The position numbers and the translations under genes are program-made. Positions 316-64,000 of a stretch of DNA of 64,000 bases are shown here, piece by piece. Position 1 is the stretch's first letter. The number at the start of each line of letters is the position of its first letter. Source of the stretch: Lepidodermella squamata (taxonomy: Eukaryota > Animalia > Gastrotricha); the NCBI GenBank assembly GCA_047495785.1, contig JBLDXI010000017.1, forward strand, positions 496,001 to 560,000, in the 5' to 3' direction. The notes below the pieces were generated by a model, which saw nothing but the letters and a program-made list of their open reading frames with translations, was not told the origin of the DNA and made no database searches.

Positions 316-3153
316 ATGATAGATGCCGATTTGACTTGCAATGTCTCGGATCATTATGACAATGGATCGTGCCATTCAGAGCGGCATTGTGAGGGAGGTC
401 TCATTCTACCCGTTTGGGGATTCTCAGAAGCTGAGGAGGAAATGAATCCCTACATCCCAATTATATATCATGCCTTAATTTACATAATATCACTGGGATA
501 TCTTCTCCTTGGCGTAAGCATCATTACTGACCGACTAGTATCGGCAACTGAGTACATGAGTGACCAGAAAAGAAGCATCGAGGTCACGCTCAGTACGGGG
601 AATTCTACCCTTATTAAGGTAACTCCTAAACAATTTTCGCAACCCGTTTTTTCACTCAGTTTCAGTTACCGATTTGGCACCCAAACGTGGCAGCACTGAG
701 TTTGCATGTTATTGGCACAAGTGCTCCAGAGATTTTACTGCCAGTTATTGAAATTTTCAAACTCCGCTTTGAAACAACACACGAGCTCGGGTCTTCACTT
801 ATTTTGGGAAGTGGAGCTTATCACCTCTTCATCATCACATGTAAGCAAGCGATTTGAAATTGCTACATTTAACCTAATTTTTGGACATTTTAGCTGTGTG
901 TCTAGCTACAGTGCGCGGAGAAGCTCCAAAGCCAATACGAGATCTAAGATTATTCTTCCTCACAGCTGCATTCGCAATTTCAGCCTATCTATGGGTGTTT
1001 CTTGTCCTTGACATCATTTCGCCTCAACAAATCGAACTGTGGGAGGCTTTGGTCACGCTAGCGCTCTTCCCTACCCTCCTCGTGCTAGCCTGGTTGCAAG
1101 GCAGAAGGACTCCAGTCAGCCTTCTTTCGAGGCTAAACCACGCTGTCCACAAAAGTAGGTCATCAGCTGCAAACCACTTTCGACAGGCAGAATCTGACGC
1201 TGCGTTGAAGCGGTGGAGCATTGTAAGCAGCCGTGTTGAATTTTTAAAGCAAGAATATCCTGGCAAGACGTCGGAGGAGCTACAGGAGATTGCTAGCATG
1301 GAACTTGAAGGTATCGGAGATAACCGGCGACCCTCTGCTTACCGGTTTACGCGACCGAAAACCCCTGCGACGAAAAACCGAACCTTAGCAGACATTCTCG
1401 AGACTCACAACAGGGTTGACCCGGATAAGATTACTCAAAGCGTCGGGTTCCCGATAGCAACAGTAAACTGTGATGAAAACTGCGAGAAAGTCAAGATTCC
1501 GGTCGAAAGATGGGGTACTGGCCTAGACGAAACTTCCCTCTTTGTCGAATTCGAAACCGTGCAAGGTACCGCTAAAGACGGGGTAAACTTCAAAGGCAAG
1601 TCTGGGTGCATTTCGTTTCCTCCTGGAGAAAGTCGGGCATACATAACCATCGAAATCTTGGACGACGATGTTTACAGCAAAGACCCTCGACGTTTCAAAG
1701 TTAAGCTTGCTAAACCAATAGTCAGCTACCCGCGAGTTGAACTTCCAGCTTCCTCTACTCAAACGGCACAAGTTCAGCGGATTATCTTTGAACGGAATGA
1801 ATTGAGCGTATTAATACTGGACAGCGACCATTTCGGCGTCTTTTCGTTTGAAACTTATGACATACCTATACCGGACAACATCGGAGTCGCGAAAATCAAG
1901 GTCAGGAGGACTATGGGTGCGAAGGGATCTGTAGCTGTTTCCTACAGGATCACACCAGGTACCGCAAGACTTGGCGAGGACTACGTCGCTCAACCAGCTG
2001 GTTACGTCTCATTCGCAGAGGGACAGATAGAGGGCACGATCGACGTTAGAATCATTGATAAGAATCGTTACGGCGATGTCTTCAACTTCTTCATAGAACT
2101 CCTGACGCCAAGAAAGGACTCGGCCTTAGATATCAAAACGTCATTACAAGCTCCATCGATAGGTAACCCTCACCTTGTCCAAATCGGAATTTGCGAATCA
2201 GAGGAAACTGAAGAGGCCCTCGATCGCCTTATGCGAACGCCTGATATAACCCCACGTTTAATCGTGAATTTATGGCAAGAACAATTCCAACGTGCAATCG
2301 AGTTGCCATTTGTTCAAGACTCAAATTCTAGACCGGGTAGTATTACTGGTATCTGGGAAAGTTATGCGAAACCCTGGTTGGTATACTTTCTATCGCTGCC
2401 TTGGAAAATATCTGTGGCCATGATTCCACCGGATCGAATTTTGTACGGCTGGCTATCTTACTGTATTCTTCTCGGGTTTATGGTGGTGGTTGCGATTCTA
2501 ATTGGAGATTGTGCTTCTCATCTTGCTTGTACTATTGGCCTCAAAGAATCAATCACTGCAATCACGATAATCCCATTAGGTAATAATTGAATTTTTCAAC
2601 TTTTATTTACATTCAATCAATATACTTTTCCTCTTAGGAATGGGTTTGCCGGATACGTTTACAAGTCGGAAGGCGACCATATTCGAGAAAACAGCCGATA
2701 TCGCCATCGGTGGAATTTTGGGCGCAAATGCTGTCAGCGTTTCCTTAGGAATCGGGCTGTCGTGGTCAATCGGGGCAATTTATCAAACTACTAAAGGAGG
2801 CGTTCTAAAGGTGAGCGGATAATTAACCCATTGGAGTTACGCTCAAGCAAAATTATATGACCATACAGCTGTGCCCAATTTCAATTCTTAAATGAGTATT
2901 TTTCATAGAATGTATTTTTGACTGTTTTCAGGTTCCATCGAGTAATTTTGGTTTCAGCGTCATGCTTTACTGCAGTTTTGCCGCTGTTGCCGTTGCCATA
3001 CTAATGCTGCGACGACTGCCACCAAACCGAGGCGAATTGGGCGGCAAAAAATCACTCAGAATGCTAACGGCCGCTAGTTTCGTGCTACTGTGGCTGTTGT
3101 TCGTCGGTCTGACAATTTTAGAGAATTACTCTGTCATTAGCGTTTTCAAATAA
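316..3153 (+). CDS. Na+/Ca2+ exchanger-like protein (NCX/SLC8 family), paralogue A; multi-exon
   Basis: Exons approx. 316-618, 666-840, ~893-2579, 2638-2810, 2932-3153, joined by GT-AG introns. Alpha-1 IGTSAPEILLP...GSGAYH, two Calx-beta domains (ILDDDVY, ILDSDHFG), alpha-2 GMGLPDTF...GANAVS, C-terminal RR..GELGG motif. Start codon uncertain. Confidence 0.92.
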
Positions 3154-3422
3154 CTATCGTTCCAGGTTCCAGGTGTGTAAAATGAAGCATCTTTCATTCG
3201 CAAATCAAGAAAAATAAAATGTACCACAAATCAGGTTTTCATTTCGAAAGGCGGCGCCAAATTGTAAAATTAAATGCTCCCATTTAAATAGGTATATGGG
3301 TTTATTTTATATCGGCTATTGATAAAAACTAGAGTTCGTTGATAAAGAAGACGCTAGACAGTGGGAGAAATTACTCACGATATCAGGCAACTGATAGGCC
3401 GAAGGGCCTTATCTTCCTAAGA

Positions 3423-8462: not shown

Positions 8463-11400
8463 TTACCGAAAGTTGTCTTTTCGATAGAGAACTCTAATGT
8501 AACAGTAGTTTTCTAGGATAGACAGTACAACAAATATCAGCCAGAGGAGGATAAAGAAGGCTCCTGAAAGAACTTTCCACACCTGTGGACCGCCGAATTC
8601 GCCGCGAATAGGCGATACGCGTCGGAATACGAGCACCAGGACAGCGGCGGTAGCGAATACACAGTACAGCATAACACTGAAGCCAGCATTTTCTGGCGGA
8701 ACCTAAAAAAAATTAAATATTTGAGCCGTCCGGTACATTTTAAATAAATTCCCAGTCCCCAAATACGCCTCCACGGTCTCAAATCTGTAGCTTACTGATA
8801 GAGAAGACCCCCTTGCTTGGTTGTAAATTGCTCCAACAGTCCACGCCATGCCGATTCCCAAGAAAACCGAGGCCGCGTTTGAGGTAGTAATGTTACCAAA
8901 GGCTGCATCTGCCGTTTTCTCGTACATAGCTGCATGACGGCCAGCAAATGTATCCGGCAGTCCCATTCCAAAAGCTATGAGTGTAATCCCTGTAATCGTG
9001 TCTTTCAGGCCAACTAAACACCCTAGATACGAAGCACAATCGCCAATCAGCGCTGAGACGAAAGCGACACAGGCGAGCAATGATAAATAGGACACCCAGC
9101 CATGGAGTAGCCGAACAGGCGGGAGTAGAGCTACAAGCAGTTTCCAAGGGAGTGAAATCACATGGATGACATAACGCTTGATAATCCACTTTGATTTCGC
9201 CTTCACGATATTAGCCGAATCGGAATTGCCGTCGCTATCTGGCATTGTATTGGCATTGAAAACGGACGTGGTTTGTTGATGCTCGTCGTGATTAACGACA
9301 AACACGTCTCGAAGCTGATCGAACCAAGTAGAAGCAACCAACAACTCGGCCATATCGGTCATTTTGAGCAGGCGATCGAGAGCGTCACGAACCTCTTCGT
9401 CTTCACATATCCCCAACTGGACAAGCTTGTGTTCGCCCAGAGTAGGTAGGCCTATGCTTGACTTGACGTCATTTGAAAGCTTTTTCGGTTGCGAAAGTTC
9501 GATATAGAACGTGAACATGTCACCGGTTCGATTTTTGTCGATAATTTCAACCTATTGAGTGGGAAATGTACATCATTCATCAACACCGTTCGAAAATTTA
9601 CCTCGAGGAACTGCTCACTTTCGCCATCTTCGAAGTAAAGGACGCCTTTTGGGGAAGGGACGATGTAATCTTCGTGAAGCTTTGCCGTTCCTGGGCTGAT
9701 CTGATACGGGACTGCTACCTTACCTTTAGTGCCAGTGCCTCGAACCACCCGAATCTTGGCGACACCAACGTTATCTGCAATCGCTTGCTCAGTTTTCTCA
9801 AACGTGAAAACGCCGCAGTGGTCGTCGTCCAAAATTGAGACAACCGTCTCTGATAGCGATAATTCAACTTTGGACACTTTCGCGTTATGCTGCGAACCGT
9901 TTGATAGATTTGAACCTAATCGGCGTAAGACAGGTTGCGAACTTCTAACCATTACCGGGTTGGACAACCTCAGGCTAAAGTTTTTGGAGGCTTCTTCATA
10001 AATTCCGTCGTCGAGGATTCGAACGGTAATTTCAGCATTCTGCTGTCCGGGCTCGAAGGTCAGCGAACCTTTAGCAGGCTCGAAATTTATGTCAGCCTTG
10101 GCGGTTCCGGCTACAGTTTCGAAGTCGACAGTTGCTGAAGTTTCGTTGATGCCAGCGCCGTTTCTTATCACAGTAATTGCTGTTTTCTCGCAACTCTCCT
10201 GGCAACTGACGGCTGAAGCTACGAATCCTATGGTTTGCACATCGTATATATTAGAGTGCAGCTTGGTTCTTTGCTCATCCTAATGTAAAAGAAAAGATTA
10301 GCTGGAAAAGCACCTGATGGAATTCATAATCATTTTATGCGAATAGAGAGATTCTATCTATCCTCAAGGTTAACTCAGTGAAAGACTAAAGGTAATGAAA
10401 GTGAACTCAGTGAAAGAGACGAATCGACCCTTATGTCGATTCTCCTTATCCTAACCAGTTCTGCTTTTCTACTTCCCTCTCTGAAATGGTCCCCAAAATA
10501 AATCCCCTGGCTGGAAAGAGGGAATACCCAACTCACATATTTTTCTTTGATGCGCTCACGAGACGGAACATTGGCGCCGCCTGATATCGCTTTTGTAGCT
10601 TGCAATCTGCGGTTAAAATCAAATGGAAGCTAGTCAACTTTCGAACTATTTGCCCTACCTGTAAAACATCGCACTCTTCGGGGTGTCCTCCAACATCTGG
10701 ATTTCAGCCATTTCTGCAGAGATGCAAATAATAATAACAATTTAGCGACATTTCGTTAAGCTCTGAACCTTCTATTTCTAGATGAGACTTTTCTGGATGA
10801 GCCTCCTTCAGATGAGCCAAAATATGCGCCAACCTGCGGCGTTTGTCATCGTCCATATCTTCGCTGAACATACTACTTGAAGACGCGGTATCGCCCCGTT
10901 GCTCACCTTGAGACGTAGCCGGTTCAATTGAGCTGCTCTGAAGGAATTTTCCAACTGACGCCAACCATTTTTGTGGAAAGCGCCTGGCTACGATCCAATC
11001 AGTGACAACCATGATAGGGAAGAACAGTAAAGTCAGCACCGCCTCCCAAACTTCAACAGTACCCGGTGAGATTTCAGCTAGCATTAGGTAGACCCATAGA
11101 TAGGCAAATATTGCATAGATGACTGTTGCGAAGAAAAAATGCCGATCTTTGATGGGTTTTGGCGAAGTTTCTTCGACGCTCAAAAGGCATATAGCAGTGA
11201 TAATGAAGAAATGATAGGCGCCGGAGCCGACTATCAGCGACGGGCCCAGGTCGTCGCTGTCGAAGCCGCCTTTGATGACGCCGAAGACGGGGAGAAATAT
11301 CTCAGGTGCAGATGTTCCGACGGCGGAAACTGTCACTGCTAGAACAGTAGGGTGCCAGACTGGTACCTAAAGGAGCAAATCCGATACGAGTAAAACGAGC

Positions 11401-12215
11401 CTAGGTTGGTTAGGGTTCAGTGGTCGTTTTAGAGTTAGGTTTAAGGTTTTTCAGAGTTCAATTTCGCCCTTAAATTTCGCAGTGAAAAGGTTCAGTAAAA
11501 GGTATCAGTAAATAGGATTCAGGTTGGTTAGGGTTCCGGGTTCAAGCAGAATCTTTTCAAGCAGAAAAAATTATTGGTATCAAGGGTCCCAAAATCGAAC
11601 AGAAACCTGAAACTCACCCTAACCCTAAAATTAATCTTGAACCCTAAGTCCTAACCCTAACCCAAATTCTTATAATTTTATAACCTTTGAAGATCCTATA
11701 AAGTGGACAAGAAATTCAGCTTTTTCGCATTTTTTGGAACTTATGTAGGATCCCGAAAATCTTTTTCAAGCCGTCAAAATGTGCATTACCTTGATAGTTT
11801 TACTGCTACCATTTTTCAGCGTAACAGTCACGGGTCGTTTGTGCGCACCAATGACCTCAATAGCCGACACGATGCCATCGGTAATTACCGTAACGCCAAA
11901 CAGAAGGTAGCATAAAATTACAGCGTAGATTGCCGCTCGATACGCTATCGTCCCAACATCACCGTCGACAGGCGGAGGCGTCCATAGTGGCAAAATTAGT
12001 CCCTGGCTGCAATCCTTACTCGCAAAGCAGCGGTCGTTTGATTGAAAGAGCGACAAATTTCTGCTCTCATTAAAATTGGACAATTGATCGGACGAATCTG
12101 TGACCTTGGATTCATTCGTAACAGGATTGCACAAAGTCGAACCGAGGTTTAGGAAAATCAATGCAATCACATAGCAAATCAGATTTTTCTGATTTTGTAT
12201 TCGATTAGCTATCAT
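8463..12215 (-). CDS. NCX/SLC8-like paralogue B; multi-exon
   Basis: Minus-strand ORFs 12215-11766 (signal peptide, TM1), 11336-10704 (VGTSAPE, GSGAYH), 10240-9452 (Calx-beta), 9518-8703 (GMGLPD, AFGNITTSNAAS), 8672-8463 (RRVSPIRGEFGG). Confidence 0.93.
11400..11665. repeat. Degenerate TTAGGG/CCCTAA-rich inverted repeat in intron 1 of NCX-B (MITE-like)
   Basis: ggttagggtt motifs on the left face aaccctaaccc motifs on the right. No clear TSD. Confidence 0.45.
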
Positions 12216-21988: not shown

Positions 21989-22083
21989 CAGCATTGCTTT
22001 CTTTTTTACCTAATTTATTTCTACTTCCTTGATAATAACGCGACAGTAATTCATTCCTCCACCTTAATAATGATTTCTGCGTC

Positions 22084-32900: not shown

Positions 32901-33126
32901 AACATTTCTTTTTTTTTAGCTTCAATACAACGTTCGAATTCACATAATTTTCCTGGCAATATGGGCAGTCATTTTCCTGACCCGTAGGCTGCCGCCTATA
33001 CGAGGCGAACTCGGCGGACAGGCGGCTATCAGCGCCCCGATTGGCGCATTTCTCATCGCTCTATGGCTTTGTTTCGTAACAATTTCCATCCTCCAACACC
33101 TTTGCGTATTCAACTACCCATTTTGA
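29909..33126 (+). CDS. NCX/SLC8-like paralogue C, highly degenerate transport motifs
   Basis: Exons approx. 29909-30851, 31066-31120, 31169-32646, 32920-33126 form an open frame with NCX topology (PIWN, Calx-beta pair, TLPWKL, RRLPPIRGELGG). Confidence 0.85.
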
Positions 33127-37000: not shown

Positions 37001-38563
37001 TTTTCTCTTTTTTAATTATAGGTTAAAATTATCGACAAAAACCGAGTCGGCGACATGTTTACATTTTATATCGAACTGCTGCAGCCGAAGAAGGAGTCTA
37101 ACGATCAAAAATCGACCGTCGGCCTGCCTACCCTGGGCGACCACAAATTAGTTCAATTAGGAATATGCGAAGATGAGGAAATTCGCGACGCCCTAGACCG
37201 GCTGTTGAAGATGACCGATCTCGCTGAATTCGTTGTTTCGTCAACTTGGCTCGACCAACTGCGCGACGCCTTCATTGTCTTCCACGACGAACATCACCAC
37301 CACACCGGACTGACGGCAGATGAATCCAATTCTACAGGCAGTGTGGTGAAACCAGCGTTTGGTTATCGGCTGAAAATGTATTTGATACATGGAATTTCCT
37401 TACCTTGGAAACTACTGGTCGCCTTATTACCTCCTGCTCGGCTTTTGCAAGGCTGGGTTGCCTATATCTCCTTGTTAGGTGAGAAAATAATTGACCTAAA
37501 TTAGGACAAATCAAACTTCGTTTGAATATAACTTCGATTTTGAACTAATTTCGGACATTTTTCAATTTCAGCTCTAATGGCCCTTATGTCGGCCCTAATC
37601 GGTGACTGCGCTTCGTACCTAGGCTGTACAGTGGGCCTTAAGGACTCGGTGACTGCAATCACCCTCATCGCTTTCGGAATGGGGGTCCCTGAGACATTCG
37701 CAAGTCGACATGCAGCCATGCGTGAAAAAACAGCGGACGCGGCTATCGGCCACATCACAGGCGCCAATGCAGTGTCAGTCTACCTAGGAATCGGCCTGGC
37801 ATGGACAGTTGGGGCGATCTACAATGCTATCAATGGATCAGAACTAATAGTGAGCATAGAAATTTCAGAATGAGAAAATAGTCTACTCTAATTTTCTAAA
37901 ATCTCACCTAGAAAGCTGAGATAACTTGGACTTTTCAAATTTGCTGGCAGAATCAGGAGTCTTTCGCTATTTTCATTAAGTTGGATCTAAGGTTCAGGAC
38001 CTTTTAGGTTTCCTAAGCTTTCCAACCGTAATTTCATGTTTTTGGAGGCAAATTTGACAGGTCCGAGTTATCTCAGCTTTCTAGGCGAGATATGATTCTT
38101 ACTCAGTTTTAAATGCTGAATATTATGGTCAAAAAATTTCGAATATTACGTAACCGGAATATTACGTAAACCGGAAAGTACAAATATCAAATAACGCGTA
38201 CTTATTTAAGTCATATAACGACCCAATTTTTTTCGATATTCATGAATATTCAATTATTTAAATTTTTAAATTTTCTAATTTTTTTAGGTTAAACCGGAGA
38301 ATGTTGGATTCAGCGTCATGCTCTACTGCTCATTCGCAACTGCGGGAGTTCTCGTCCTACTTCTGCGGCGGTTGCCGCCAATCCGCGGCGAACTCGGCGG
38401 GCCGCAATCCCTGAAAATTCTTTCAGCCATTTATTTCTTCATACTCTGGGTTCTATTCGTCGCGCTGTCCATCCTCGAAAACTACTGCTTTATAAGTGGC
38501 TTTTACCACCATGAGTCCCCGACATCCAGTCAGCTATCATCTTCCAGCCACGGGAAAAAATAA
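34090..38563 (+). CDS. NCX/SLC8-like paralogue D; multi-exon
   Basis: IGTSAPE...GSGAYK; Calx-beta ILDDGIYEE/ILDDDHCG; GMGVPETF...AIGHITGANAVS; RRLPPIRGELGG. Looks most similar to B. Confidence 0.93.
37901..38091. mobile_element. Palindromic MITE in last intron of NCX-D
   Basis: atctcacctagaaagctgagataacttggac versus gtccgagttatctcagctttctaggcgagat. Confidence 0.7.
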
Positions 38564-39051
38564 ACCAATTTCGTGAGCAGCGAGGGGCCGAAAAGATGCC
38601 GATTTAACCAGCTGCAATTCCGCAGAAATACTGGCCTCGCCATCTTAAAATAGTTTTGCTATTAATTAGACCTATTAGGAATTATATCTAATATTTTTTC
38701 AAAATTCTTCAGTGCATATTTTTCTAATGATGATGACAAGGTGGAGAGAAAAATAAAACAAATCCTATATGATGAGATGAGCATATTTCTGGCAGCTGTA
38801 CCAACGATCAGAAGTGTAGGTGGGTGTGGAAATAAAAAACACGACTCGTGCTTTACCCCCACTCACCCGCGCGCACCTCCACTCTCGCATCTGGTACAAT
38901 ACGCCTCAATATCTCCAGCTTAAAAAATGTTTTTATTGTCTTCCCAAGTAATTATTAGTAGCGAATTAAATTAATCAAAATACCTTAACAGCTGTTACAC
39001 TTATCCGTATTTTTTCTGCATTTTTTAAACTATTTTTCCCTCGTTTTTTTA

Positions 39052-42000: not shown

Positions 42001-44632
42001 GACGCAGTTATCCAATTTACGGCGTCGTAAACGGTGATTGTTTTTGTAAAATCCGACGCCGTCTCGAAGCCGTCGATGCGAGAAACGAGGCGCTGAAGCA
42101 AAAACTTGCGAAAGTGCAATTTAACATTGTAAATGAGGCCTTGGTCGAGCGGCTGGGCTTCACTAGTAGAATTAGGAGGCAAAAACACCAGCTTGACGTT
42201 CGACAATTCGATTTCGACATGGCTTGAACAGTTGTCTAGAAGCAATAAAATTTTGCGGTTTTGTTTGTTCATGGCGCTGTTCAGGTCCTTTAGATATTCT
42301 TCAAAAATAGCCGTCGTCATCCACGCCTTCTTACTGTAACGCCACGTGACCGGAAGATTACGCAAGTCGCGAGCCACGTTGTTTGCTTTAAACGCGCGAG
42401 GATACGCCGCGTGACCTGGAATGAAGTGTTTACACAAGATTATGTAACGCGAGGATTGTTTACCGATTACGAGCGGCTTTAATTTCTCGCCGAGAGCGCT
42501 GCAGGTAAACAACACGCTAACACGCTCCTTAGCCACTTTAACGCCTTTGCATGCGTCATCGCTCAAAACGTAAGACCGAGTCGGAAGTTGACGGAAAAAA
42601 AATCCTTTAAATCATAAAATTTATAAAAGAAATCGTAAAATTGAAAAAAATCAATTACCGGTCTCGTCGCAATTAAAAATATCTTTCATCGCATAGCCGG
42701 CAATTATAGTGGGTAGTTTTAGGAACCATGCCGCGAGCGATTCTTTCGGCAACTCCGCCGATTCACCGCTTAGTTCTTTCAATGAAATCCCTTCGCGATC
42801 AAGCCAGCTGCGAAGCCAGCCGTTACTCGCCGCGAAATTGGCATATCCCAGGGCATCAGCAAAGAATTTCGCTTTTGTTTGCAAAATGGGACCGTCTAGA
42901 GCAATGTTCTTGCTTCGACAAAGCACTAGGAACGCCAGAAGCATAGAATTAATGACTCCAAATTTACACTCTCGCAGCGAGCGCGATCGGCATTTGGTGT
43001 CATCGACTTTGCCTTCTTTATTAACAGCGAGTGAACTCAAGTAGAGAGCTTGTAATTTTTCGCGATCTTTCTTGATCTTAGAAACGGTAGACGGCGCGAT
43101 ATTGAACTCGGCGGCTATTTTAGGATAGGGAGTTTTCGCATCGATAAGCTCCAAAACCTTCATTTTATCTTGAAGATTTAATTCCGGCATCGTAAAACAA
43201 AAATTGTGAATGAAATTACTCTAGAATTTAGCGAAGAAATTTTAGGAATTAGCTTTGAAAATTCGACTTCGCAGAGTCAAAACAATGGGCCATATGGCTA
43301 CCGTTCCTTTCCCGCCCTTCGACTTTCGAGATAGACAGAGTTCGACTTCACAGAGTAAATATTATGTGTCACATGCTGAAAAACCCACGGTTCCTCGCCA
43401 CGCGTTCGACATACACGAGTTTTCGAGATACACAGAGTTCGAGATAACAGGTTTTACTGTAATAGGAAAAATAGGAATAGGAATTGAATTAGGAATGGGA
43501 ATAGGAATTAGGAATAGGAATAGGTTTATCGATTGAGCATTTAACAGTTTTCCAATATTTTAAGGAAACGTATCGATTCCTTACCACGTCAACTCTGGAA
43601 CGGCTCAAATCGATAACGACTTTATACCGATTGGCGGAGCCCGAAACGAGTTGAAATTCGAAAAAGGCGTCTACGAGAAGACAATCGAGGTCCAAGTTAT
43701 TGACAAGAATCGCTGCGGCACCATTCAGACCTTCTTCATCGAGTTATTCGACCCTTTAGTCCTCGATCACCACGCGTCATCTCAAGTTGCTCACCCTACC
43801 CTGGGCGATAACCGGCTGATTCAAATCGGAATTTGTGAAAATGAAGAAGTTAAAGAGGCTATGGATCGGCTGGTGAAGATGACAAGTCTATCCGAATACG
43901 TCATCACCGAATCTTGGTCGGATCAAATTAAGGAGGCGTGTTCGGTTACCTTTCACTGCGAACACCCTAGTCCATTCGAAAAATTTCGCGGTTACGCATT
44001 TTTTGTCCTGTCATTCCCTTGGAATTTCCTCGTCGCCCTTCTGCCACCCACTCGAATGATCCATGGCTGGGCGACCTATTTGTCCTTACTAGGCCTTGTA
44101 GCCTTAGTAGCTGCCTTAATAGGAGATATAGCCATCCATCTAGGGTGCACGGTCAAATTGAAAGATTCAGTCATGGCTATTACCCTAATCGCGTTTGGTA
44201 TGGGCCTTCCGGACACTTTTGCCAGTCGACATGCGGCTATGCATGAAAAAACAGCGGATGAAGCTATCGGGCATATTACCAGGGCTAATACCGGATCGGT
44301 TTTTCTCGGTATGGGCCTAGCCTGGACTGTTGGTGCAGCTTATCAAAAGGCTCACGGTCATAAACTCGAGGTAAAACGTGAAAATTATTCTGTATATTAT
44401 TTCTTTCCTGATTTTGCTCTAGATAAAAACTGATCATCTTGATTTCAATGTGATAATGTACTGTGTGCTGGCGAGTTTCGCCATCATTGTACTATTTATC
44501 AGGCGTTTACCTCCGATTCGAGGCGAATTAGGCGGACCGACTTGGTCGAAGGTTATATCTGGAATGTTCTTCCTCGGTCTCTGGGTTGTTTTTGTTGTCA
44601 TGGGAACACTAGAAGCTTACAATTTACTTTGA
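39052..44632 (+). CDS. NCX/SLC8-like paralogue E; multi-exon; intron 41163-43564 carries a Tigger element
   Basis: IGSSAPE...GSGAFH; IIDDDVYE/ILDDDHGG; GMGLPDTF...AIGHITRANTGS. Splicing AAAG|gt...taag|GAAAC restores GSKGNVSIPY. Confidence 0.92.
41190..41303. repeat. Degenerate (ATAGGA)n satellite, continuing at 43462-43524
   Basis: The same repeat flanks both sides of the Tigger insertion. Confidence 0.85.
41306..43459 (-). mobile_element. pogo/Tigger DNA transposon, apparently full length
   Basis: Perfect 22-bp TIR CAGTAAAACCTGTTATCTCGAA, TA TSD at 41304-41305 and 43460-43461. Confidence 0.95.
41475..43190 (-). CDS. pogo/Tigger transposase (HTH_psq + CENP-B HTH + DDE_1), spliced
   Basis: Exons 43190-42659, 42604-42464, 42415-41475. 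Triad FNCDETG / LLLDNCSSH / QPLDQG (DD29D); C-terminal PIP-box-like QPSITEYF. Confidence 0.9.
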
Positions 44633-54967: not shown

Positions 54968-57900
54968 ATGCTACAGCCATCCAACCACTCAAACTGCCAT
55001 TCTGGTCTGTTGATACCCAAAAGATGGTTCCGAACCGATTTGCCACTGTTGGATCCATCGAATGTGAAACAAGTCGCAGTTATCGTCGTCCTTCTACTTT
55101 ACCTATTGTACGGCGTTTCTTTCATTACCGAACGAATAATTCTAGCTATGGAGGTGATTTCTACTCAAAAGCGGGCTAAAACCGTCAAATTAATGACTGG
55201 AGTAACGAAAACAATTAAGGTGAGACGATTGACCTAGTTTCAGACAATTTTAAAGAATTTTTAAAGGTACCATTTTGGAACCCATTAGTGATCTCTCTAA
55301 CGGCGTTTACCATCGGAACCCCCGAGACATTTCTACCTCTGATCGAGGTGGTTAACCGAGGTTTCGAGGCCCATCACCTCGGCCCTTCGTTGATCGTTGG
55401 AAGCGCTGCTTTTCACCTGTTCGCAATAATCGGGGTCTGCCTGTTAAGTGGCGACGAAACTTGCCCCAAACCTATCAGGGACCGAGCTGTTTTCACCACC
55501 CAAACAGCTTGTTCCATTTTGGCCTATTTCTGGATTTGGGTTGTCATCGATCTAATTTCACCTGGTGTTGTCGAGTTATGGGAGGCGATTTTCACGCTCT
55601 GTTTGTTTCCATGCTTGGTTCTAATTATCTGGAGCGTGTCGAAGAGCTACCCTCAGCGGTTTTTGGCGCGAATTAGGCGAAGATACCGCGGTGGAAGCGA
55701 CGAAGAAAATGCCCTACTTCTGCCGCCAGCTGATTATGAAGATCATATGAAAATCGATAGCATAGCTGGGAATAGTAGTAGCTTTTACTACCTGAGTCGA
55801 ACTCGAAAAGGCCGGGAATTTGCTAGTTTGGTCGAAAAATTGAAGTCGACTCATCCGGAAAAATCTCGAGCTGAATTGGAAGGTAACACAATTTAGCTCG
55901 ATTTACCGTAAAAACCGAATTTGGGTCCTAGTTCTATAATAGTGCCTCGCCTGGTATAAACCCCCAGTCTGAGCGATGATTGAACTAATAATATCTCAGG
56001 CCTAAATTAGTATCTTGGTTTCTTAATACATTTTTTTGCACTTGTCACATGACTGAAAATTACTAATTGCATTTCCGAATCCGATTTAACAAACATTCAA
56101 TTAAAATGATGCGAAGCTCAACTCTGATCTGGTGAGTATAAATGCCTGTTAGCTGAGATGAATTGTCATCATTTCCCGTCAGAAAAATTCCCCGGTGTTG
56201 TTGATAGCTAAGGGAGATGCGAAGGGGATTGAAGAAACATGAAAACAATCACTACGAAGAGGACATTTAACTGTTGTTTCATTTTAGACGCTTTTCCAAA
56301 TTAATTTTTCATCTCATGAAGATAGATTCAAATAAATAATACCACAGCCTACAATTGTACCTCGCCTGCAATAAACCCTCACTTTTCTCTTGGTTTGAAA
56401 CTATAAAAACACGGCACCCAATTTCGGTTTTTACGGTAATTCAATTTTTAATCAAAATTATTTAGAAATGGCTGAGGTCAAAATTCTGGCTGGAATTCCT
56501 CGAAATGCTACATTTTACAGGTAAATTTTATCTTCAATAATTTTCAAGTTTTTAAAAATTGGATCGATATTCGGGAATTGAGTGTTATTTTGAACTTTGA
56601 ATTTAAAATTTAAAATTTAATAAAATTTGAAATTTCAACTTTTTAAATTCAATTTTTCAGAATTTTTGGTCATATTCGGGATTGCCATGTTCCTCTGATT
56701 TCAACTCAAAAAGTTGGTTTCGTACTGGCCTATCACACCTGTTCAGAAGATTGCGGCCAAGTTACCATCAGAGTCGGCCGATGGGGCCCAGAAATCGCTT
56801 CAACCACCCTATTTGTCAACTACGAAACAGTCGAAGGCGAAAACGCCAAGCCATTCATCCACTACGAACCTACTGTTGGAACTATTACATTCCAACCAGG
56901 GCAGAAATTCGCCGAAATTTGCGTTACAATCATCGACGATAATGTCTACGACCCTCGGGAGCGCATTTTCAGCATTAGGTTGAAGCACCCGAGCCTTCAA
57001 ACCCACAGTCGGGTGAAACGAGTTGAAGTCACCCTGGGCGATGCTGTTATATCGATTCTGGACAACGACCACGCTGGCGTCTTCTCATTCGAAGATTCCT
57101 ATCTCAGCCTTGAAAGTTTCAGTGATCGAGCGAGAATTAAGGTGGCTCGTCATTTAGGCGCAAGGGGTTCCATCTCGGTACCGTATCGAATCAACAAAGG
57201 AACCGCCTTAATTGACAATATCCGAGGCGATTTGACCTTCAAAACTGGCCAATTAGAAAGCTACATCGACGTTGAAATTCCCGAAAAATCTGCCGAAGAT
57301 TCCGATGTTGTTCGAATGTTTTTCATCGAGCTTCTGGAACCTGAATATTTACCCGAGGATGACGACTCAGAAGATTTAAGCTCCGTGGCGAAACCTGTTT
57401 TAGGGTCGAATAAATTGGTTCAGATAGCGTTGTTGGCACCGGGCCAAGTTGCGGATTTTGCCGCTGAATTATCAGATTTTTTGCTGGTCGAAAGCTGGCT
57501 GGATCAATTTCGCGATCTAGTCACCCTACCTGATCGCAGCAACCGTTCAAAGCCGGTTTTTATCACCTGGATTTTCCTGATAATTTCATGGCCGTGGCAA
57601 TTTATTCTGGCCATCATACCGCCTGTTTGCTTTTTCAGCGGCTGGATCGCTTACATTTTGCTAATCTGCTTGATGGGTGTTACAACTGCCCTAATTGGTG
57701 ATTTAACGTCATTCCTAGGGTGCCTAGTCGGCCTACAGGATATTGTGACTGCGGTCACCCTGATCGCGATAGGGGCTGGCCTGCCGGATTTGCTAGCAAG
57801 TCGGCATGCGACTATTCATGAGAAATTCGCCGATTCAGCTATTGGCCATATTACCAGTTCGAATACCGGGTCGGTTTTTCTCGGTATCGGACTGGCTTGG

Positions 57901-58590
57901 ACAGTTGGAGCGGCTTATCAAGCTGCTCATGGCAGACACCTGGAGGTAAAAATTGAGAAATAATCAATTTTTTGTGCGTATTTTATCAGAACATTTCAAG
58001 AGTAATTTTTGAGAATGTCTCAATTTTTGAGAATTTCAATTTTTCAATTTTAAAATAATTGGTAAAGGAAGTCCTAAATTTGGGGATCCAGCACTGAATT
58101 ATGAGCCGATATCGATTTTGAGAATCAATTTAGCAAATCAGTGATTTTTCCAATATCGACATTGAATATTTTCTGGATAAAATTAAATAATTAAATTAAA
58201 TTAAAAACCCATGATTTAGGGTGCGTAGTTAGAATAGGATAGGGAATTTTGGCAATTAGCAAAGCTATATTGAATGCAAATTTATAATATTTGCGATAAA
58301 TTTAAATTTTAATCGTTAGATCCATAAGTCCGATGTCCGATGTCCGATGTAAATTTGCAATTTTTTTCATTTTTTAGATGCCGTCCGCGGAAAGTTTTGC
58401 ATTTTTCGTGCTCACCTATTGCATTATGGCCGTGATTGGCGTTTCAATTCTACTACTACGGCGATGCGCACCGATCAACGGCGAACTCGGCGGGCCTCGA
58501 TGGGCTAAAATTTTATCGGCCACGTGCTTTCTAGGCCTCTGGTCCGGCTTCGTTGTTCTATCAACACTGAACGCCTACTCTCTGCTCTGA
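54968..58590 (+). CDS. NCX/SLC8-like paralogue F; multi-exon
   Basis: FTIGTPETFLP...GSAAFH; IIDDNVYD/ILDNDHAG; GAGLPDLL...AIGHITSSNTGS; RRCAPINGELGG. Confidence 0.9.
55906..56436. mobile_element. TA-flanked MITE in NCX-F intron
   Basis: TA-CCGTAAAAACCGAA...TTCGGTTTTTACGG-TA. Confidence 0.8.
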
Positions 58591-59667: not shown

Positions 59668-62600
59668 ATGGCTGAGCTGGATTTATTGTTTCAAACTAAT
59701 GTCAGCGTTGATACTGGACCAACAACAACAGCCGTCATGACTTTACTGCAAATTTTTCAGAGCCAAATGAACGCGTCATCATCGCTTCGAAACTCTTCCT
59801 ATCCAAGCTCAAAAAATGCGACGAATTACTACTCGAATCGGACGATTTACGGCAGTAAAACGGTTCATGACGATGACGACAGCCATGGCCATGGTCACGG
59901 CCACGGTTCATCGGATACGTGCTCTTCAAAACACGAAGGCTGTATCAGTGGTCTGTTGTTGCCAGCTTGGCAGCCGGTGAAAGATATCGATGAAATCACT
60001 CGAGCGTATCGGGCTGTTGTCTACATTCTAGCATTGGCCTATATGCTGTATGGAGTCAACATCATCACGGATCGACTTGTCTCAACGATTGAAGTTATCA
60101 TATCCGCTAAGCGGACTGTCAAAATTCAAAGTGATGGTGGGACTAAATTCGTAAAGGTAAATAAAAAATCCAGCTTAAATTTTATAAAATATCAATTTTT
60201 TTTTTAGAAAAAATTTTCATTTTCATTTTCGTGGTCAGACTTTTCAGCAGTGACACTTCAGCAAATGAGGTCAAATCAGCAGTTACGTTTCATCAGTGAC
60301 ACCTTGTCACTAAAAAATTCATAAAATCAACTAAAATCAACTCATCAATTTTTATTTATTTATCACGGGCACTTTTTGAACTTAACTTTAATGCATAGCA
60401 TAGTCCCTCTGCTGAATACGGCTGAAATTCAATTGACGAAAAATGTCTCCGCTGAAATGTCACTGCGCAAATGTCACTGAGATGAAAGTAATAAATTTGA
60501 AAGAAATATTCGACAAATTAACAAAAATCACTGCTGACTTGTTACTGATGATTTGTCTCTGCGCAAATGTCGCAGCTCAAATGTCACTTGCTCATTTGTC
60601 ACTGATGATAAGTCACTGATGATGTGATCCTCATTTGCTGAAATGTCACTGCTGAAAAGTCGTACAACTTTTAATTTTAATTAATTTTAATTTTAATTTT
60701 TAGGTTCCATTGTGGCATCCTGTTGTAGCCACCCTAACCGTATTCGTTATTGGCGCTTCTGCAGCCGAAATTTTCCTACCAACAATTGAAATTATAAAAC
60801 ATGGCTTCGAGACTGACGAATTAGGGCCGTCTTTGATAGTCGGCTCCGGAGCTTATCACCTGTTCCTCATCACTGGCCTGTGTATGATGAGTGTTAAAGA
60901 AACTGTCGGCAAGCCGATAGAAGATCTACACGTGTTTTTCGTCTCAACTGCTTTCGCCATTATTGCCTATTTGTGGCTCTACTTGCTAGCCGAACAAATT
61001 TCACCCGGAATCATCGAACTATGGGAAGCGCTCGTCACGGTAAAAAAAAACTTCTAATAAAAAAAAATATGTCCCCTAAAATTCAATAAAAAAAATGTGT
61101 TTGGATCATTTTCAAAAACTAATTTCTAAAATTTCTAAAAATTGAAATTTCAATTTATTTTGCCCCAATTCGGGTTCGATCTTGCCGAAATTAGGAAACC
61201 TCGATTAGTCCTGATTAGCTTGGACGTTATTTGAACCTAAACGTCATCAATTTTCTAAATATTTAATCCGGATAATTCTCTATAATTAAAAAGCTGGCGC
61301 TATTTCCGGGCATTGTTATCGTGGCTTGGATTGTCGAGCGGCGCCTGATTGCCATTCTATTCCGGCGCATTTGCTGTATGGCGAAACTGCCGGGGACAAG
61401 TTCTCATCTAGACGGCATCACAGACGTTGCCGGCTCGTCTATGGTCGAGCAGGAGCGGAGGCGGCGCCTCGGCGACCTACTTAAAGAGCTCAAAGCCGCT
61501 CATCCCGAGAAATCTCAAATTGAATTAGAAGAAATGGCTCAGGTGAATCATAGGGGCATTTTGAATTAATTTTAAATTTTTTTAAATTTGTTTTCAGCTC
61601 AAATTGCTGGAAGCTGCTCCTAAAGGAGCGGCGTTCTACCGTATGCAAGCTTCAAAAGCGAGCAGTGGTGGTGGAGCTGTGATATCAAAAGACAAAATCA
61701 AAAAGCGATTGGTAAAAAAATAATTTTCTGATAAAAATCTGGCCTTAAAACTTAATTTTCATTTCATTTTTTTTCGAATAATTATTTCACTAATTTTTTA
61801 TTTGTATTGATTGATTAGGATGACATACGAGTATGTTTTATGAGGGCCTAATTAAAGCGTAGTATTAGTTGAAATTCTCTATTTTTTTCTTTTCGTTTCT
61901 CACCTTGGATTCGAAAAATATGTTCACTCAATTTTCCATTGGATGCTGAAACTTTCCCGAAATGTCCCCTACAGCCCAAGGAAATTTCATTTTAGTTGCA
62001 TGATACCCTGAAGTATGTAGAATAATTCTCGTAATTAGCTTCGTAGCCTGATAACTGGAAAAATACCGGAACTTCACATTTAGGTGGGCACTTGGCAGAT
62101 CCATGAAAAAAGTTATAATCAAATTTTAATTAGTGACCAATAGCCTTTTTAGCTGAGGAATTTCTTCCCTTAAAATGTTACTCTACAAAGGTCATAGAGA
62201 AAAAAGTGACTCAATTTTTTCCCCTATCCCATATCGGTACCGGTTAGTCGAACCAAGTCGAACTAGTTTCAGCTTGCTCGAACCTAGCCGAACCTAGCCG
62301 AAGCTATTTTAGCTTGGTCGAACCTAGCCGAAGCTTTTTTAGCTTGGTCGAACCTTTCGACACCAGATGGTCGAACCTATAATCTAACGTCTTGAGATGT
62401 GGTCAAACTTTTTCGGGCGTGGAAGAACTTGGCCGAACAATTTTCGACATATAAAAATTGCCGTCCGAATCGTTGGCCGAGCCAAGCCGAACATTTTGTT
62501 CGACATTGTTCCTAGAATAGTTCTAGGAAGTCCTCCTTATGACCTAGAATAGGTTATAATCCTCACCTTATTGAGCAGCAAATAGCACGCTTAATTATAG

Positions 62601-64000
62601 GTCCTAGGTCTATAATATCTATTAGGTTTATACGAACTTCAGTTTAGGAAGAAACCAAATAATTTTCATAATTTACCAGTCAAATAATCACTATAAATGT
62701 TTATATCCTCGAATTTATTTGCAGCAACAAGAACATCACGAAGCAGACGAGAGGAAAAGCGAATATCACGACCCGAACGCGCAATACGTCGGGTTCATTG
62801 AAGCGAAACACACGTGCATCGAAAGCTGCGGCGCCTACGTGCTGACAATCGAACGAACCGGCGGCGGCATCGAAGACACCGTCCTAGAGGTCGACTACAC
62901 AACCGCCGATGGGACATCGATAGCTGCTAGTGATTATGAAGAAACAAAAGGCACTCTCATCTTCTCATTGGGCCAAAAAACGGCCGAAATTTCTGTCACC
63001 ATCATCGATGACGATGAATTTGAGGAGGATAAGGAATTTTATGTCCGGCTGTCGAATCCTAGGCTGACGTATAGCAAACACCCTGCAGTCACCCTACATG
63101 TCCCTGAGATGAACGGCAAGAAACGGGCGTCTCAGTCTGAAAGTAGGCGGACTTCGTCGAGCTTGAAACCATCGTCCGGTTCAAACAGCCGGCGGCCAAG
63201 TCACGCTCCATTTCCTTTCGTCGGCGAAGACCACGAATATTTCGTCAGCCTTTCAGTACCTGAAGCAACTGTGATGATACTAGACGACGACCACTGCGGC
63301 ATTTTCCACTTTGAAGGCCCCGAATCGGCGATTCCTGATAACATAGGAATCGCGCATATCAAGGTAATTAGGTCAACAGGTGCGAGGGGCCGGGTTAAAG
63401 TCCCGTTCCGGGTCAACCCTGGTACGGCTAAGGAGACGGAGGACTACATCCCGCCAACGGAACAGGAGTTAATTTTCGAAAACAACCAACCCGAAGCGTC
63501 GATTCCGGTTGAAATCGTTGATGCGAATCGGGTCGGCGAGTTGTTTACATTTTTCATCGAATTATTCGACCCGGTTATTATGACGCAACCTCCCGCTAAC
63601 CCGGCTGGCAATCCGTCCCTAGGCGATCCTAAGGTGATAAAACTCGGCATTTGTGAAGACCACGAACTGACCGAGGCCTTGGACCGGTTACTTAAAGTTG
63701 GCGATATGGCTGAGCTTATTTCATCCACAACATGGCTGGACCAGTTTAAGGAGGCGTTTCAAATATCATTCGACAGCGATAATGAAGACGGCAGCGAAGA
63801 TGAGGACGAAGAAACGCCTAGTCGTAGTGAAAACAGCGGAGAAAATGGCAAGAGCAAATGTTCGAAGTGTAGATCTCATTGCGGCAAAGTGAAAACGGTT
63901 CTACTGTGGGCGATTTCGCTGCCGTGGAAGCTGATTGCGGCGGCGTTGCCTCCAGCGCGTTACCTTGGCGGGTGGTTGGCGTTCGTTCTACTTCTTGGCC
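59668..64000 (+). CDS. NCX/SLC8-like paralogue G, 3'-incomplete in this window
   Basis: N-terminal His-rich segment, IGASAAEIFLP...GSGAYH, Calx-beta IIDDDEFEED/ILDDDHCG, and SLPWKL near the window end. Start uncertain. Confidence 0.9.
60238..60661. mobile_element. Inverted-repeat MITE with CAGTGACA/TGTCACTG subrepeats in NCX-G intron
   Basis: gacttttcagcagtgacacttcagcaaatgagg versus cctcatttgctgaaatgtcactgctgaaaagtc. Confidence 0.8.
62245..62510. repeat. Degenerate tandem repeats (tcgaacctagccgaa-like) in NCX-G intron
   Basis: Directly visible ~10-bp subunits; probably MITE-internal. Confidence 0.6.

What the first reader, a model, noticed from the sequence alone, without database searches (positions are those of the whole stretch)
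316..64000. Seven-gene NCX cluster with a rewritten ion-binding site: candidate exchanger subfamily that is not Na+/Ca2+
Established: canonical animal NCX has GSSAPE (TM2), GSAAFN (TM3), GTSVPD (TM7) and GNVTGSNAVN (TM8); these supply the ligands equivalent to NCX_Mj T50/S51/E54, S77/N81, T209/S210/E213 and S236/D240. Seen: no paralogue here keeps the set. TM3 Asn is His in A, B, E, F, G (GSGAYH, GSGAFH, GSAAFH), Lys in D and Gln in C. TM7 GTS is GMG in A, B, D, E and GAG in F. The last TM8 Asn is Ser in A, B, D, E, F (GANAVS, TSNAAS, GANAVS, RANTGS, SSNTGS). The preceding GN is GH in D, E, F. The central carboxylates and the open frames are kept. Inference: the changes are shared, so they predate the expansion and look like a specificity switch rather than decay. 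Losing Na+-ligand hydroxyls and gaining His/Met suggests proton coupling or soft-metal (Zn/Cu/Ni/Mn) transport, with each copy tuned differently.
Basis: partly seen in the sequence, partly recalled or inferred. Interest (0 to 1): 0.82.

Follow-up and report, generated by a model that had tools for sequence, protein, structure and literature searches.

The report
Exchanger gene array, rebuilt ion pocket
This stretch of an invertebrate genome holds seven old, intact sodium/calcium-exchanger genes (plus the tail of an eighth) in which ion-binding residues that are otherwise unchanged from algae to humans have been replaced, so the proteins probably move ions in a different ratio or of a different kind, which nobody has tested.

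Summary
The window carries seven SLC8/NCX-type genes with Calx-beta domains (A-G) and the last exon of an eighth. All have open GT-AG gene models.

There are three corrections:
- Copy C has lost the TM7 carboxylate.
- Copy F has a two-residue deletion inside the TM2 motif.
- The array runs past both window ends.

In an exhaustive search, 125 canonical NCX representatives, from a green alga to vertebrates, keep the classical ligand set almost without exception. The His / Gly-Met-Gly / Ser signature occurs only here and in nine unnamed proteins, eight from metagenome assemblies and one from a read-run assembly; most lie in two tandem arrays of a second organism.

The 16 divergent proteins form one clade (support 100/100) with cross-species orthologue pairs, so the rewiring and the subtypes predate the species split. 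Synonymous sites are saturated. All 29 listed coding differences in gene D are synonymous. D is spliced as predicted in a probable RNA run. This is a maintained change, not decay.

Which ions are moved remains untested. I favour loss of one Na+ site plus a titratable His/Lys in the pocket. The scan earlier described a differently rewired 12-gene NCX array about 200 kb downstream in the same genome.

The parts
2..139 (+). Last-exon fragment of a further NCX copy that lies upstream of the window
   Evidence: tblastn to P0001 residues 801-846, 57% identity. It shows that the array continues to the left.
232..3153 (+). NCX paralogue A, 880 aa, 5 exons, introns of 47-121 nt
   Evidence: Gene model. 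Pfam finds Calx-beta and Na_Ca_ex. Motifs: TM2 GTSAPE at 714-731, TM3 GSGAYH at 807-824, TM7 GMGLPD at 2579/2638-2654 (first codon split by an intron), TM8 GANAVS at 2721-2738. Orthologue P0004, support 99/96.
8463..12215 (-). NCX paralogue B, 940 aa, 7 exons
   Evidence: Gene model. Motifs: TM2 GTSAPE at 11318-11301, TM3 GSGAYH at 11228-11211, TM7 GMGLPD at 8969-8952, TM8 TSNAAS at 8885-8868. 63% identical to D.
29909..33126 (+). NCX paralogue C, 872 aa: a divergent 'C type' that lacks the TM7 carboxylate and the acidic cluster of CBD1
   Evidence: Motifs: AWCSLE at 30272-30289, GSSSFQ at 30362-30379, IWGLPL at 32463-32480, TYNVVN at 32553-32570. The CBD1 motifs are degenerate. Orthologue P0141 (FWGLHH), support 100/100. 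The intron in the loop region (30852-31176) is uncertain.
34090..38563 (+). NCX paralogue D, 953 aa, 8 exons; transcribed and under purifying selection
   Evidence: Motifs: GTSAPE at 34784-34801, GSGAYK at 34874-34891, GMGVPE at 37676-37693, GANAVS at 37760-37777. Run X2 covers the exons but not the introns, and its joint 37849>38288 (GT..AG) equals the predicted last intron. All 29 listed exonic differences are synonymous.
39052..44632 (+). NCX paralogue E, 861 aa, 7 exons; a 2.4-kb intron holds a DDE_1 transposase ORF (41475-42566, minus strand)
   Evidence: Motifs: GSSAPE at 39454-39471, GSGAFH at 39544-39561, GMGLPD at 44197-44214, RANTGS at 44281-44298. The first exons are covered by run X2. 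The start codon is uncertain (no upstream Met in frame; first Met taken).
54968..58590 (+). NCX paralogue F, 806 aa, 5 exons; two-residue deletion inside the TM2 motif
   Evidence: Motifs: IGT--PET at 55312-55329, contiguous within one ORF, GSAAFH at 55399-55416, GAGLPD at 57772-57789, SSNTGS at 57856-57873. Sister of E, support 100/98.
59737..64000 (+). NCX paralogue G, cut by the window end after TM6 (745 aa seen); His-rich N-terminus
   Evidence: Motifs: GASAAE at 60752-60769, GSGAYH at 60842-60859. The CBD1 acidic motifs are fully canonical. Orthologue P0003 (GASTAE), support 100/99. HGHGHGHG lies at residues 49-57.

Best explanation
These are working members of a lineage-restricted offshoot of the classical bilaterian SLC8 (NCX) exchangers.

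What they keep:
- the ten-helix core with two alpha repeats;
- the central divalent-cation site: Glu in TM2, Asp/Glu in TM7, and the TM2 hydroxyls;
- the two Calx-beta domains, with the CBD1 Ca2+-binding acidic motifs largely intact in B, D, E and G.

What has been rebuilt is the alpha-2 side of the pocket:
- The two hydroxyls of the outer Na+ site (NCX1 Thr810/Ser811, NCX_Mj T209/S210) are Met/Gly.
- Their hydrogen-bond partner on TM3 (the NCX_Mj N73 position) is Leu.
- The two residues of the middle site (NCX1 Asn143 and Asn842, NCX_Mj N81/D240) are His (Lys in D) and Ser.

Inferred mechanism: the proteins still bind and carry Ca2+ or another divalent cation, but they can no longer load three Na+. 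One Na+ site is filled by hydrophobic side chains. A titratable base in the pocket supplies or shuttles a positive charge. Exchange therefore runs with fewer Na+ and/or with H+, probably close to electroneutral, and most copies are still gated by cytosolic Ca2+.

Shown here: anatomy, ancestry, conservation, and for D expression and constraint. Inferred: everything about ions and stoichiometry. The subtypes, conserved between two species, would be tuned variants. The C type, which lacks both the TM7 carboxylate and the CBD1 acidic cluster, is probably not a transporter of this kind.
For: - Family: Na_Ca_ex and Calx-beta domains; E about 1e-143 to human NCX1 structures, with the motifs aligned residue for residue.
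- Invariance elsewhere: in 125 canonical representatives, including an ancyromonad, a green alga, oyster, rotifers, nematodes, arthropods and vertebrates, the changed positions are 98-100% conserved.
- Conservation of the new state in the non-C-type clade members: His 8 of 10 at the Asn143 position, Met 9 of 13, Gly 11 of 13, Ser 10 of 13, Leu 9 of 9.
- TM2 ligands and both carboxylates are kept in A, B, D and E.
- One clade, support 100/100, stem 1.06 substitutions per site, nested with classical bilaterian NCX.
- Orthologue pairs across two organisms. The same GMGLPD and GSGAYH strings recur in the second organism's arrays.
- Selection and expression.
- CBD1 motifs.
- Literature: these positions are ion ligands; in NCX1, mutating the ligand positions E113, D814, S109, S110, S140, T810, S811, S838 and N143 abolished activity (PMC3679957, sections 17 and 20). 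Site assignment and the N73/N232 roles are in PMC4753433. Ligand changes in NCLX and NCKX go with changed stoichiometry or selectivity (PMC9820601).
- Lys at the TM3 position in D, paired with Glu instead of Asp in TM7, fits a charge-substituting role.
Against: - No functional data of any kind exist.
- In NCX_Mj, single alanine changes at N81, S210, S236 and T50 hardly alter kcat/Km, and T209A or D240A leave 10-25% of it (PMC4753433). The substitutions need not abolish Na+/Ca2+ exchange.
- The middle site may not bind ions at all in NCX_Mj (PMC9820601).
- The mapping of the N73/N232 equivalents assumes no indels between the archaeal and animal helices.
- Not every clade member has every change: P0004 has GTG, P0003 has GMS, and B keeps Asn before TM8.
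- I could not examine side-chain geometry.
- Expression is shown only for D and the start of E, from contigs of a run whose RNA nature is a guess.
Confidence: 0.5

Rival explanations
1. They are still ordinary Na+/Ca2+ exchangers, 3:1 or close to it, with altered kinetics, affinity or conformational equilibrium. The substitutions tune rates rather than specificity.
For: - The NCX_Mj alanine scan shows that N81A, S210A, S236A and T50A are nearly neutral, and that the N73/N232 mutants mainly shift the inward/outward equilibrium (PMC4753433).
- Both carboxylates, the TM2 hydroxyls and the TM3 Ser are kept in most copies.
- The Ca2+-sensor motifs are kept.
Against: - The five to seven changed positions are 98-100% invariant across eukaryotic NCX, which argues that they matter for the canonical cycle.
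- NCX1 mutants at T810, S811 and N143 were inactive (PMC3679957, citing Nicoll et al.).
- Met, Leu and Gly remove three polar groups of one Na+ site at once.
- A His or Lys is placed between the two carboxylates.
Confidence: 0.2
2. They are transition-metal exchangers (Zn2+, Mn2+ or similar, perhaps against H+). His, Met and the two carboxylates form a softer site.
For: - His, Met, Glu and Asp are ligand types seen in ZIP, CDF and Nramp transport sites (my own knowledge, not tested here).
- His-rich stretches occur in G (N-terminus) and D (loop before TM6), against 1 of 136 canonical representatives.
- Plant MHX shows that an NCX-derived protein can carry Mg2+/Zn2+ (PMC3679957).
Against: - His-rich stretches occur in only 2 of 16 clade members.
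- D has Lys and C has Gln at the His position, and F has Ala at the Met position.
- The CBD1 motifs still look like Ca2+ sensors.
- MHX made a different change (Glu113 to Gln) that is absent here.
Confidence: 0.12
3. They no longer transport. They act as regulatory or scaffolding 'pseudo-exchangers', for example as Ca2+ sensors or as partners of active copies.
For: - The C type has lost the TM7 carboxylate and the CBD1 acidic cluster, yet it is kept as an open frame in two organisms.
- F has a deletion in the TM2 helix break.
Against: In A, B, D, E and G the carboxylates, the helix-breaking Gly/Pro and 77 of 120 canonical invariant columns are kept. The new pocket residues are themselves conserved, which fits a working site.
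Confidence: 0.1
4. They are decaying duplicates, or artefacts of the gene models.
For: Some loop-region splice sites and the start codons of C, E and F are uncertain.
Against: - Seven open frames across two to seven introns each.
- Saturated synonymous sites with dN well below them.
- 29 synonymous and 0 non-synonymous differences in D.
- A spliced transcript junction exactly as predicted.
- Orthologues in a second organism.
Confidence: 0.02

Closest known systems
SLC8A1-3 / Drosophila CALX / nematode NCX-1 to NCX-3 (classical NCX)
   Same: - Two Na_Ca_ex repeats and two Calx-beta domains in the large loop.
- E about 1e-143 to human NCX1 structures (8SGI, 8JP0).
- The TM2 motif G(T/S)SAPE, both pocket carboxylates and the CBD1 DDDH motif are kept in most copies.
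- The clade nests with classical bilaterian NCX.
   Different: - NCX1 Asn143 is His or Lys.
- Thr810-Ser811 is Met-Gly.
- Asn842 is Ser.
- Ser838 is Ala in A, D and E.
- The Asn before TM8 is His, Ser or Gly.
- The Thr before the TM3 Gly-Ser is Leu.
- NCX1 Asn96 is His in most members, and Asn101 is Ala, Ser, Thr or Gly.
- The CBD2 acidic cluster is replaced by DKNR.
- There are many tandem copies, whereas invertebrates are reported to have a single gene (abstract of PMC2408596, as listed).
NCLX / CCX (SLC8B1)
   Same: A CaCA exchanger in which most Na+ ligands differ from NCX. It is thought to exchange with a different stoichiometry (2 Na+ or Li+ per Ca2+, electroneutral; PMC9820601). This is the kind of outcome proposed here.
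   Different: - NCLX has no Calx-beta domains.
- Its motifs are different (GNGAPD / GNSIGD in the alignment).
- It is only a distant sequence match (E about 1e-6).
- It belongs to another branch of the superfamily.
Plant MHX (Mg2+, Zn2+ / H+ exchanger)
   Same: It descends from NCX and has changed ion specificity through a few substitutions near the alpha-1 repeat (PMC3679957).
   Different: - MHX changes Glu113 to Gln and keeps the Ser/Thr ligands at 109, 110, 140, 810, 811 and 838.
- The present clade does the opposite: it keeps Glu and loses Thr810, Ser811 and Asn143.
- MHX is limited to plants.
Second rewired NCX array in the same genome (scan finding s1-401875, about 200 kb downstream)
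   Same: It lies in the same genome and is also a tandem array of old intact NCX genes with ligands replaced. The earlier agent reached the same general conclusion.
   Different: That array is described as Ser to Cys in TM2, with Ser to Ala and Asn to His in TM8. That is a different site and a different set of substitutions. I did not examine that DNA.

Membership tests
SLC8 / NCX exchangers (CaCA superfamily) | Two Na_Ca_ex membrane repeats (PF01699) | tested here: met
   Pfam matches in the exons of A, B, C, E and F. Full-length alignment of all copies.
SLC8 / NCX exchangers (CaCA superfamily) | Tandem Calx-beta domains (CBD1, CBD2) in the central loop, diagnostic of NCX against CCX (PMC4232491) | tested here: met
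   Calx-beta matches with two stretches each, E down to 1e-32. CBD1 motifs aligned.
SLC8 / NCX exchangers (CaCA superfamily) | Sequence and tree placement with classical NCX | tested here: met
   E about 1e-143 to human NCX1 for the clade member P0001. The clade groups with bilaterian NCX at 100/100 in a tree rooted on protist NCX.
SLC8 / NCX exchangers (CaCA superfamily) | Alpha-1 signature G(S/G)SAPE | tested here: inconclusive
   E has GSSAPE. A, B and D have GTSAPE, which is also seen in a few canonical representatives. F has a deletion, G has GASAAE and C has AWCSLE.
SLC8 / NCX exchangers (CaCA superfamily) | Alpha-2 signature GTS(I/V/L)PD | tested here: not met
   The motif is GMGLPD, GMGVPE, GAGLPD or IWGLPL here, against GTS[LVIM]PD in all 125 canonical representatives.
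SLC8 / NCX exchangers (CaCA superfamily) | The twelve ion-coordinating residues of NCX1 and NCX_Mj | tested here: not met
   Four to five of the twelve differ: the N143, T810, S811 and N842 equivalents, plus S838 in A, D and E. Two second-shell residues, the N73 and N232 equivalents, also differ.
SLC8 / NCX exchangers (CaCA superfamily) | Electrogenic 3 Na+ : 1 Ca2+ exchange | not testable with these tools
   This needs flux or current measurements.
NCLX / CCX | No Calx-beta domains; GNGAPD and GNSIGD-type repeats | tested here: not met
   Calx-beta domains are present. The match to NCLX structures is only E about 1e-6, and the motifs differ.
Plant MHX | Gln in place of NCX1 Glu113, Asp at the Asn101 position, plants only (PMC3679957) | tested here: not met
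   Glu is kept in TM2 in all seven copies. The Asn101 position is Ala, Ser, Thr or Gly.

The most novel reading that the evidence does not exclude
The clade is a new functional class inside the SLC8 family. It would consist of Ca2+-regulated exchangers whose outer Na+ site has been filled in and whose pocket carries a titratable His or Lys. They would exchange a divalent cation against H+, or against fewer Na+, or carry a transition metal. The class has diversified into at least four or five subtypes that have been conserved between species, one of them a carboxylate-less pseudo-exchanger.
Probability: 0.4. Interest if true: 0.8.

Novelty: new variant of a known kind. Interest (0 to 1): 0.62.

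Why it matters
How the twelve pocket residues set ion selectivity and the 3:1 stoichiometry of NCX is still debated, including what the middle site does. So far it has been probed mostly with engineered mutants of one archaeal protein.

Here nature supplies a family that has kept the whole NCX scaffold and its Ca2+ sensors. It has replaced a coherent set of pocket residues that are invariant from algae to humans, and it has then maintained the new set under selection in many paralogues of two species.

Measuring what these proteins carry would test directly which ligands define the Na+ sites. Swapping the residues into NCX1 or NCX_Mj would add to that test. Together these experiments could reveal a new coupling mode in a medically important transporter family.

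The finding also contradicts the textbook picture of one NCX gene per invertebrate.

Tried and rejected
- **Pairwise dN/dS between paralogues.** Synonymous sites are saturated (pS 0.73-0.82), so no ratio can be given. The result only shows that the duplicates are old and that dN lies far below saturation.
- **DNA pattern scan of the JGI metagenome collection.** I scanned for a degenerate pattern encoding GMGLPDTFxSR. It gave two hits, both chance matches with no NCX context. This says the clade is rare there and nothing more.
- **Word-based protein searches.** They found only three and two relatives. The exhaustive search was needed.
- **ESM Atlas look-up.** It returned only generic NCX clusters.
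- **Literature search for the motif strings.** One irrelevant hit. A search for NCX1 residue numbers gave nothing useful.
- **Rfam.** Nothing on the window, and only a tRNA on the related loci. This was no help with the organism.
- **His-rich stretches as a clade-wide mark of metal handling.** Rejected: they occur only in D and G.
- **The organism.** I could not establish it myself. Run names are coded. 'Probably the gastrotrich Lepidodermella squamata' is an earlier agent's unchecked note.
- **Structure prediction.** Not run. The tool returns no coordinates, so side-chain geometry could not have been examined.


Full report
**What is in the window**

The window is animal DNA with about 0.36-0.47 G+C outside one G+C-rich stretch, and many GT-AG introns of 47-60 nt. 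A six-frame motif scan, Pfam and tblastn with a full-length homologue locate seven genes of the Na+/Ca2+-exchanger (SLC8/NCX) type, with two Na_Ca_ex repeats and two Calx-beta domains. They also locate the last exon of an eighth copy at 2-139.

I built gene models by choosing, at each junction, the GT-AG pair that keeps the frame and best fits the homologue. I then corrected five places where tblastn had read through introns. The models are:

| Gene | Coordinates | Strand | Length |
|---|---|---|---|
| A | 232-3153 | + | 880 aa |
| B | 12215-8463 | - | 940 aa |
| C | 29909-33126 | + | 872 aa |
| D | 34090-38563 | + | 953 aa |
| E | 39052-44632 | + | 861 aa |
| F | 54968-58590 | + | 806 aa |
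| G | 59737 onward, cut at 64000 before TM7 | + | 745 aa seen |

All frames are open. Some splice sites in the variable loop, and the start codons of C, E and F, are uncertain. The alpha-repeat regions are not affected by this.

**The observation**

| Helix | Motifs by copy |
|---|---|
| TM2 | GTSAPE (A, B, D), GSSAPE (E) |
| TM3 | GSGAYH (A, B, G), GSGAFH (E), GSAAFH (F), GSGAYK (D), GSSSFQ (C) |
| TM7 | GMGLPD (A, B, E), GMGVPE (D), GAGLPD (F) |
| TM8 | GANAVS (A, D), TSNAAS (B), RANTGS (E), SSNTGS (F) |

The preceding GN is GH in D, E and F.

Corrections:
- Copy C reads AWCSLE / GSSSFQ / IWGLPL / TYNVVN, so it has lost the TM7 carboxylate.
- F has a two-residue deletion inside the TM2 motif (IGT--PE), within one uninterrupted ORF.
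- G has GASAAE, without the helix-breaking proline.
- The array is larger than seven. There is a stub at the left edge, and G runs off the right edge. Other first-stage notes of this scan describe NCX copies 17 kb upstream and in the window that overlaps the right edge.

Alignment to the human NCX1 structures (8SGI, 8JP0) places the motifs exactly on GSSAPE, GSAAFN, GTSVPD and GSNAVN.

**How unusual the substitutions are**

I ran an exhaustive HMMER search with P0001 against 1.84 billion cluster representatives. P0001 is an intronless 856-aa relative from a metagenome. The search returned 150 best hits, which I aligned with the window's proteins.

The 125 canonical representatives include a green alga, an ancyromonad, an oyster, bdelloid and seisonid rotifers, nematodes, a horsehair worm, a mite, flies and fishes. 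They read GSSAPE / GSAAFN / GTS[LVIM]PD / GSNxVN almost without exception. The positions of NCX1 Asn143, Thr810, Ser811 and Asn842 are 100% conserved among them.

The His / Gly-Met-Gly / Ser signature appears only in the window's proteins and in nine unnamed proteins, eight from ENA metagenome assemblies and one (P0137) from a Logan run assembly (P0001-4, 11, 12, 19, 137, 141). Most of these come from two contigs of one sample set. One contig of 35.5 kb carries about seven NCX genes in tandem (L004 and L001). Another carries at least three (L005). GMGLPD and GSGAYH recur along those arrays.

No paper in the searchable library contains these motif strings. A survey of nematode NCX reports only the canonical repeats (PMC4232491). 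[quoted passage not shown]

**Ancestry**

In a careful maximum-likelihood tree rooted on protist NCX, the 16 divergent proteins form one clade. Ultrafast bootstrap and SH-aLRT are both 100, and the stem is 1.06 substitutions per site. The clade sits inside a 100/100 group with classical bilaterian NCX. A larger quick tree agrees.

Within the clade there are cross-organism pairs:
- G with P0003 (100/99)
- A with P0004 (99/96)
- C with P0141 (100/100)
- B, D, E and F grouping with P0011 and P0019 (82/93)

So the rewiring happened on the stem, before the family split into subtypes. The subtypes predate the separation of the two organisms, whose orthologues are 32-58% identical. Subtype-specific oddities are shared across the organisms: GAS[AT]AE in the G type, and Trp at the Thr810 position with no TM7 carboxylate in the C type.

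**Not decay**

Between all paralogue pairs the synonymous sites are saturated (pS 0.73-0.82), while dN is 0.31-0.87. The copies are old and constrained, although no ratio can be stated.

I laid contigs of two public runs on 34000-39900. All 29 exonic differences among the 40 best-supported ones fall on third codon positions of gene D and are synonymous. None is non-synonymous. Only 40 of 164 differences were listed.

Run X2 is probably RNA. It covers the exons of D and the first exons of E but not their introns or the intergenic spacer. It also contains the joint 37849>38288 with GT..AG ends, which is exactly the predicted last intron of D.

**What changed, in structural terms**

Twenty-six columns that are at least 90% invariant in canonical NCX have switched in the clade, and 77 of 120 are kept. 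The switched columns cluster in TM1-3 and TM6-8.

I use the published equivalence of NCX_Mj and mammalian ligands (PMC9820601, PMC4753433) and the positions in the NCX1 alignment.

| Position (NCX_Mj / NCX1) | Role | State in the clade |
|---|---|---|
| T209, S210 / Thr810, Ser811 | outer Na+ site | Met, Gly |
| N73 / Thr before the TM3 Gly-Ser | hydrogen-bonds T209 | Leu in all nine non-C-type members scored |
| N81 / Asn143 | middle site | His, or Lys in D |
| D240 / Asn842 | middle site | Ser |
| N232 / Asn before TM8 | hydrogen-bonds T50 | His, Ser or Gly |
| S236 / Ser838 | inner Na+ site | Ala in A, D, E; Ser in B, F |

In most copies the clade keeps the TM2 ligands, the TM3 Ser and both carboxylates, which are the elements that bind Ca2+ in NCX_Mj. 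NCX1 Asn96 is His in most members. NCX1 Asn101 is Ala, Ser, Thr or Gly. A cysteine mutant at Asn101 loses ionic regulation (PMC3679957).

The mapping of the N73 and N232 equivalents is my inference from helix register.

**Regulatory domains**

The CBD1 acidic motifs are fully canonical in the G type and largely kept in B, D and E. They are weakened in A and F and degenerate in the C type. The acidic cluster of CBD2 is replaced by DKNR in most copies.

**Mechanism**

The best-supported reading is as follows.
- Most copies are working exchangers that still bind a divalent cation at the central site and are still gated by cytosolic Ca2+.
- They cannot load three Na+, because the outer site has lost three polar groups at once.
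- They carry a titratable base between the carboxylates.

I therefore expect exchange with fewer Na+ and/or with H+, probably near electroneutral. The Lys of copy D, paired with a longer TM7 carboxylate (Glu), fits a built-in charge better than a metal ligand. I put this reading at about 0.5.

The rivals are:
- ordinary Na+/Ca2+ exchange with altered kinetics (0.2). The main argument for it is that single alanine mutants of several of these positions in NCX_Mj are almost neutral (PMC4753433).
- transition-metal transport (0.12). His-rich stretches in D and G give weak support.
- non-transporting pseudo-exchangers (0.1 overall, but likely for the C type).
- decay or artefact (0.02).

None of the ion assignments is tested.

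**Comparison with known systems**

By architecture, sequence and tree position the proteins belong to the SLC8 branch. They fail two of its defining sequence features, the alpha-2 signature and the twelve-ligand set.

They resemble NCLX and plant MHX only in principle, as CaCA proteins whose ligand changes go with new coupling. The substitutions are different, and those families lack Calx-beta domains (PMC3679957). I therefore class the clade as a new variant of a known kind.

**Relation to earlier findings of the scan**

An earlier agent described a 12-gene NCX array about 200 kb downstream in the same genome. It has a different rewiring, with Cys, Ala and His at another Na+ site, and the agent reached the same general conclusion. 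I did not examine that DNA.

Another agent's note says the genome is probably the gastrotrich Lepidodermella squamata. I could not check this. It would fit the absence of named relatives and a 2015 transcriptome-like run.

**Limits**

- There is no functional test and no side-chain geometry.
- Expression evidence covers D and part of E only.
- I do not know whether the genome also keeps a canonical NCX.
- The taxon is unverified.

Noticed in passing
window 13460-13993, 15301-15924, 26069-26749, 28708-29328 (+): Exons matching Pfam Methyltransf_7 (SABATH-type SAM-dependent carboxyl methyltransferase, best known from plants). They amount to two or three gene copies between NCX B and C.
   Followed up: no
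window 48937-51828 (+): An uninterrupted 963-aa ankyrin-repeat ORF in a stretch of 0.50-0.55 G+C, against about 0.40 around it. Another note of the scan calls it a pseudokinase fused to a DARPin-like array.
   Followed up: no
window 41475-42566 (-): A DDE_1 (pogo/Tigger-like) transposase ORF of 363 aa, lying inside the 2.4-kb intron of NCX E.
   Followed up: no
window about 37900-38330: A high-copy repeat in the last intron of NCX D. Word depth in DNA run X1 is 750-7000, against about 50 around it.
   Followed up: no
window 4001-6000: A strongly skewed stretch (GC skew -0.19, AT skew -0.23) with a weak ankyrin-like ORF at 4644-5180.
   Followed up: no
NCX G residues 49-57 (exon 59737-60156) and NCX D residues 703-715 (exon 37022-37478): His-rich stretches: HGHGHGHG in the N-terminus of G and HDEHHHH in the loop before TM6 of D. 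Only 1 of 136 canonical NCX representatives has a comparable stretch.
   Followed up: partly
L004 + L001 (one 35.5-kb ENA metagenome contig) and L005: A second, unnamed animal with nearly intronless genes carries the same NCX clade in two tandem arrays. One lies next to trypsin/Sushi and nuclear-receptor genes, the other next to CFAP65, SAM50-like and TRIC genes.
   Followed up: partly
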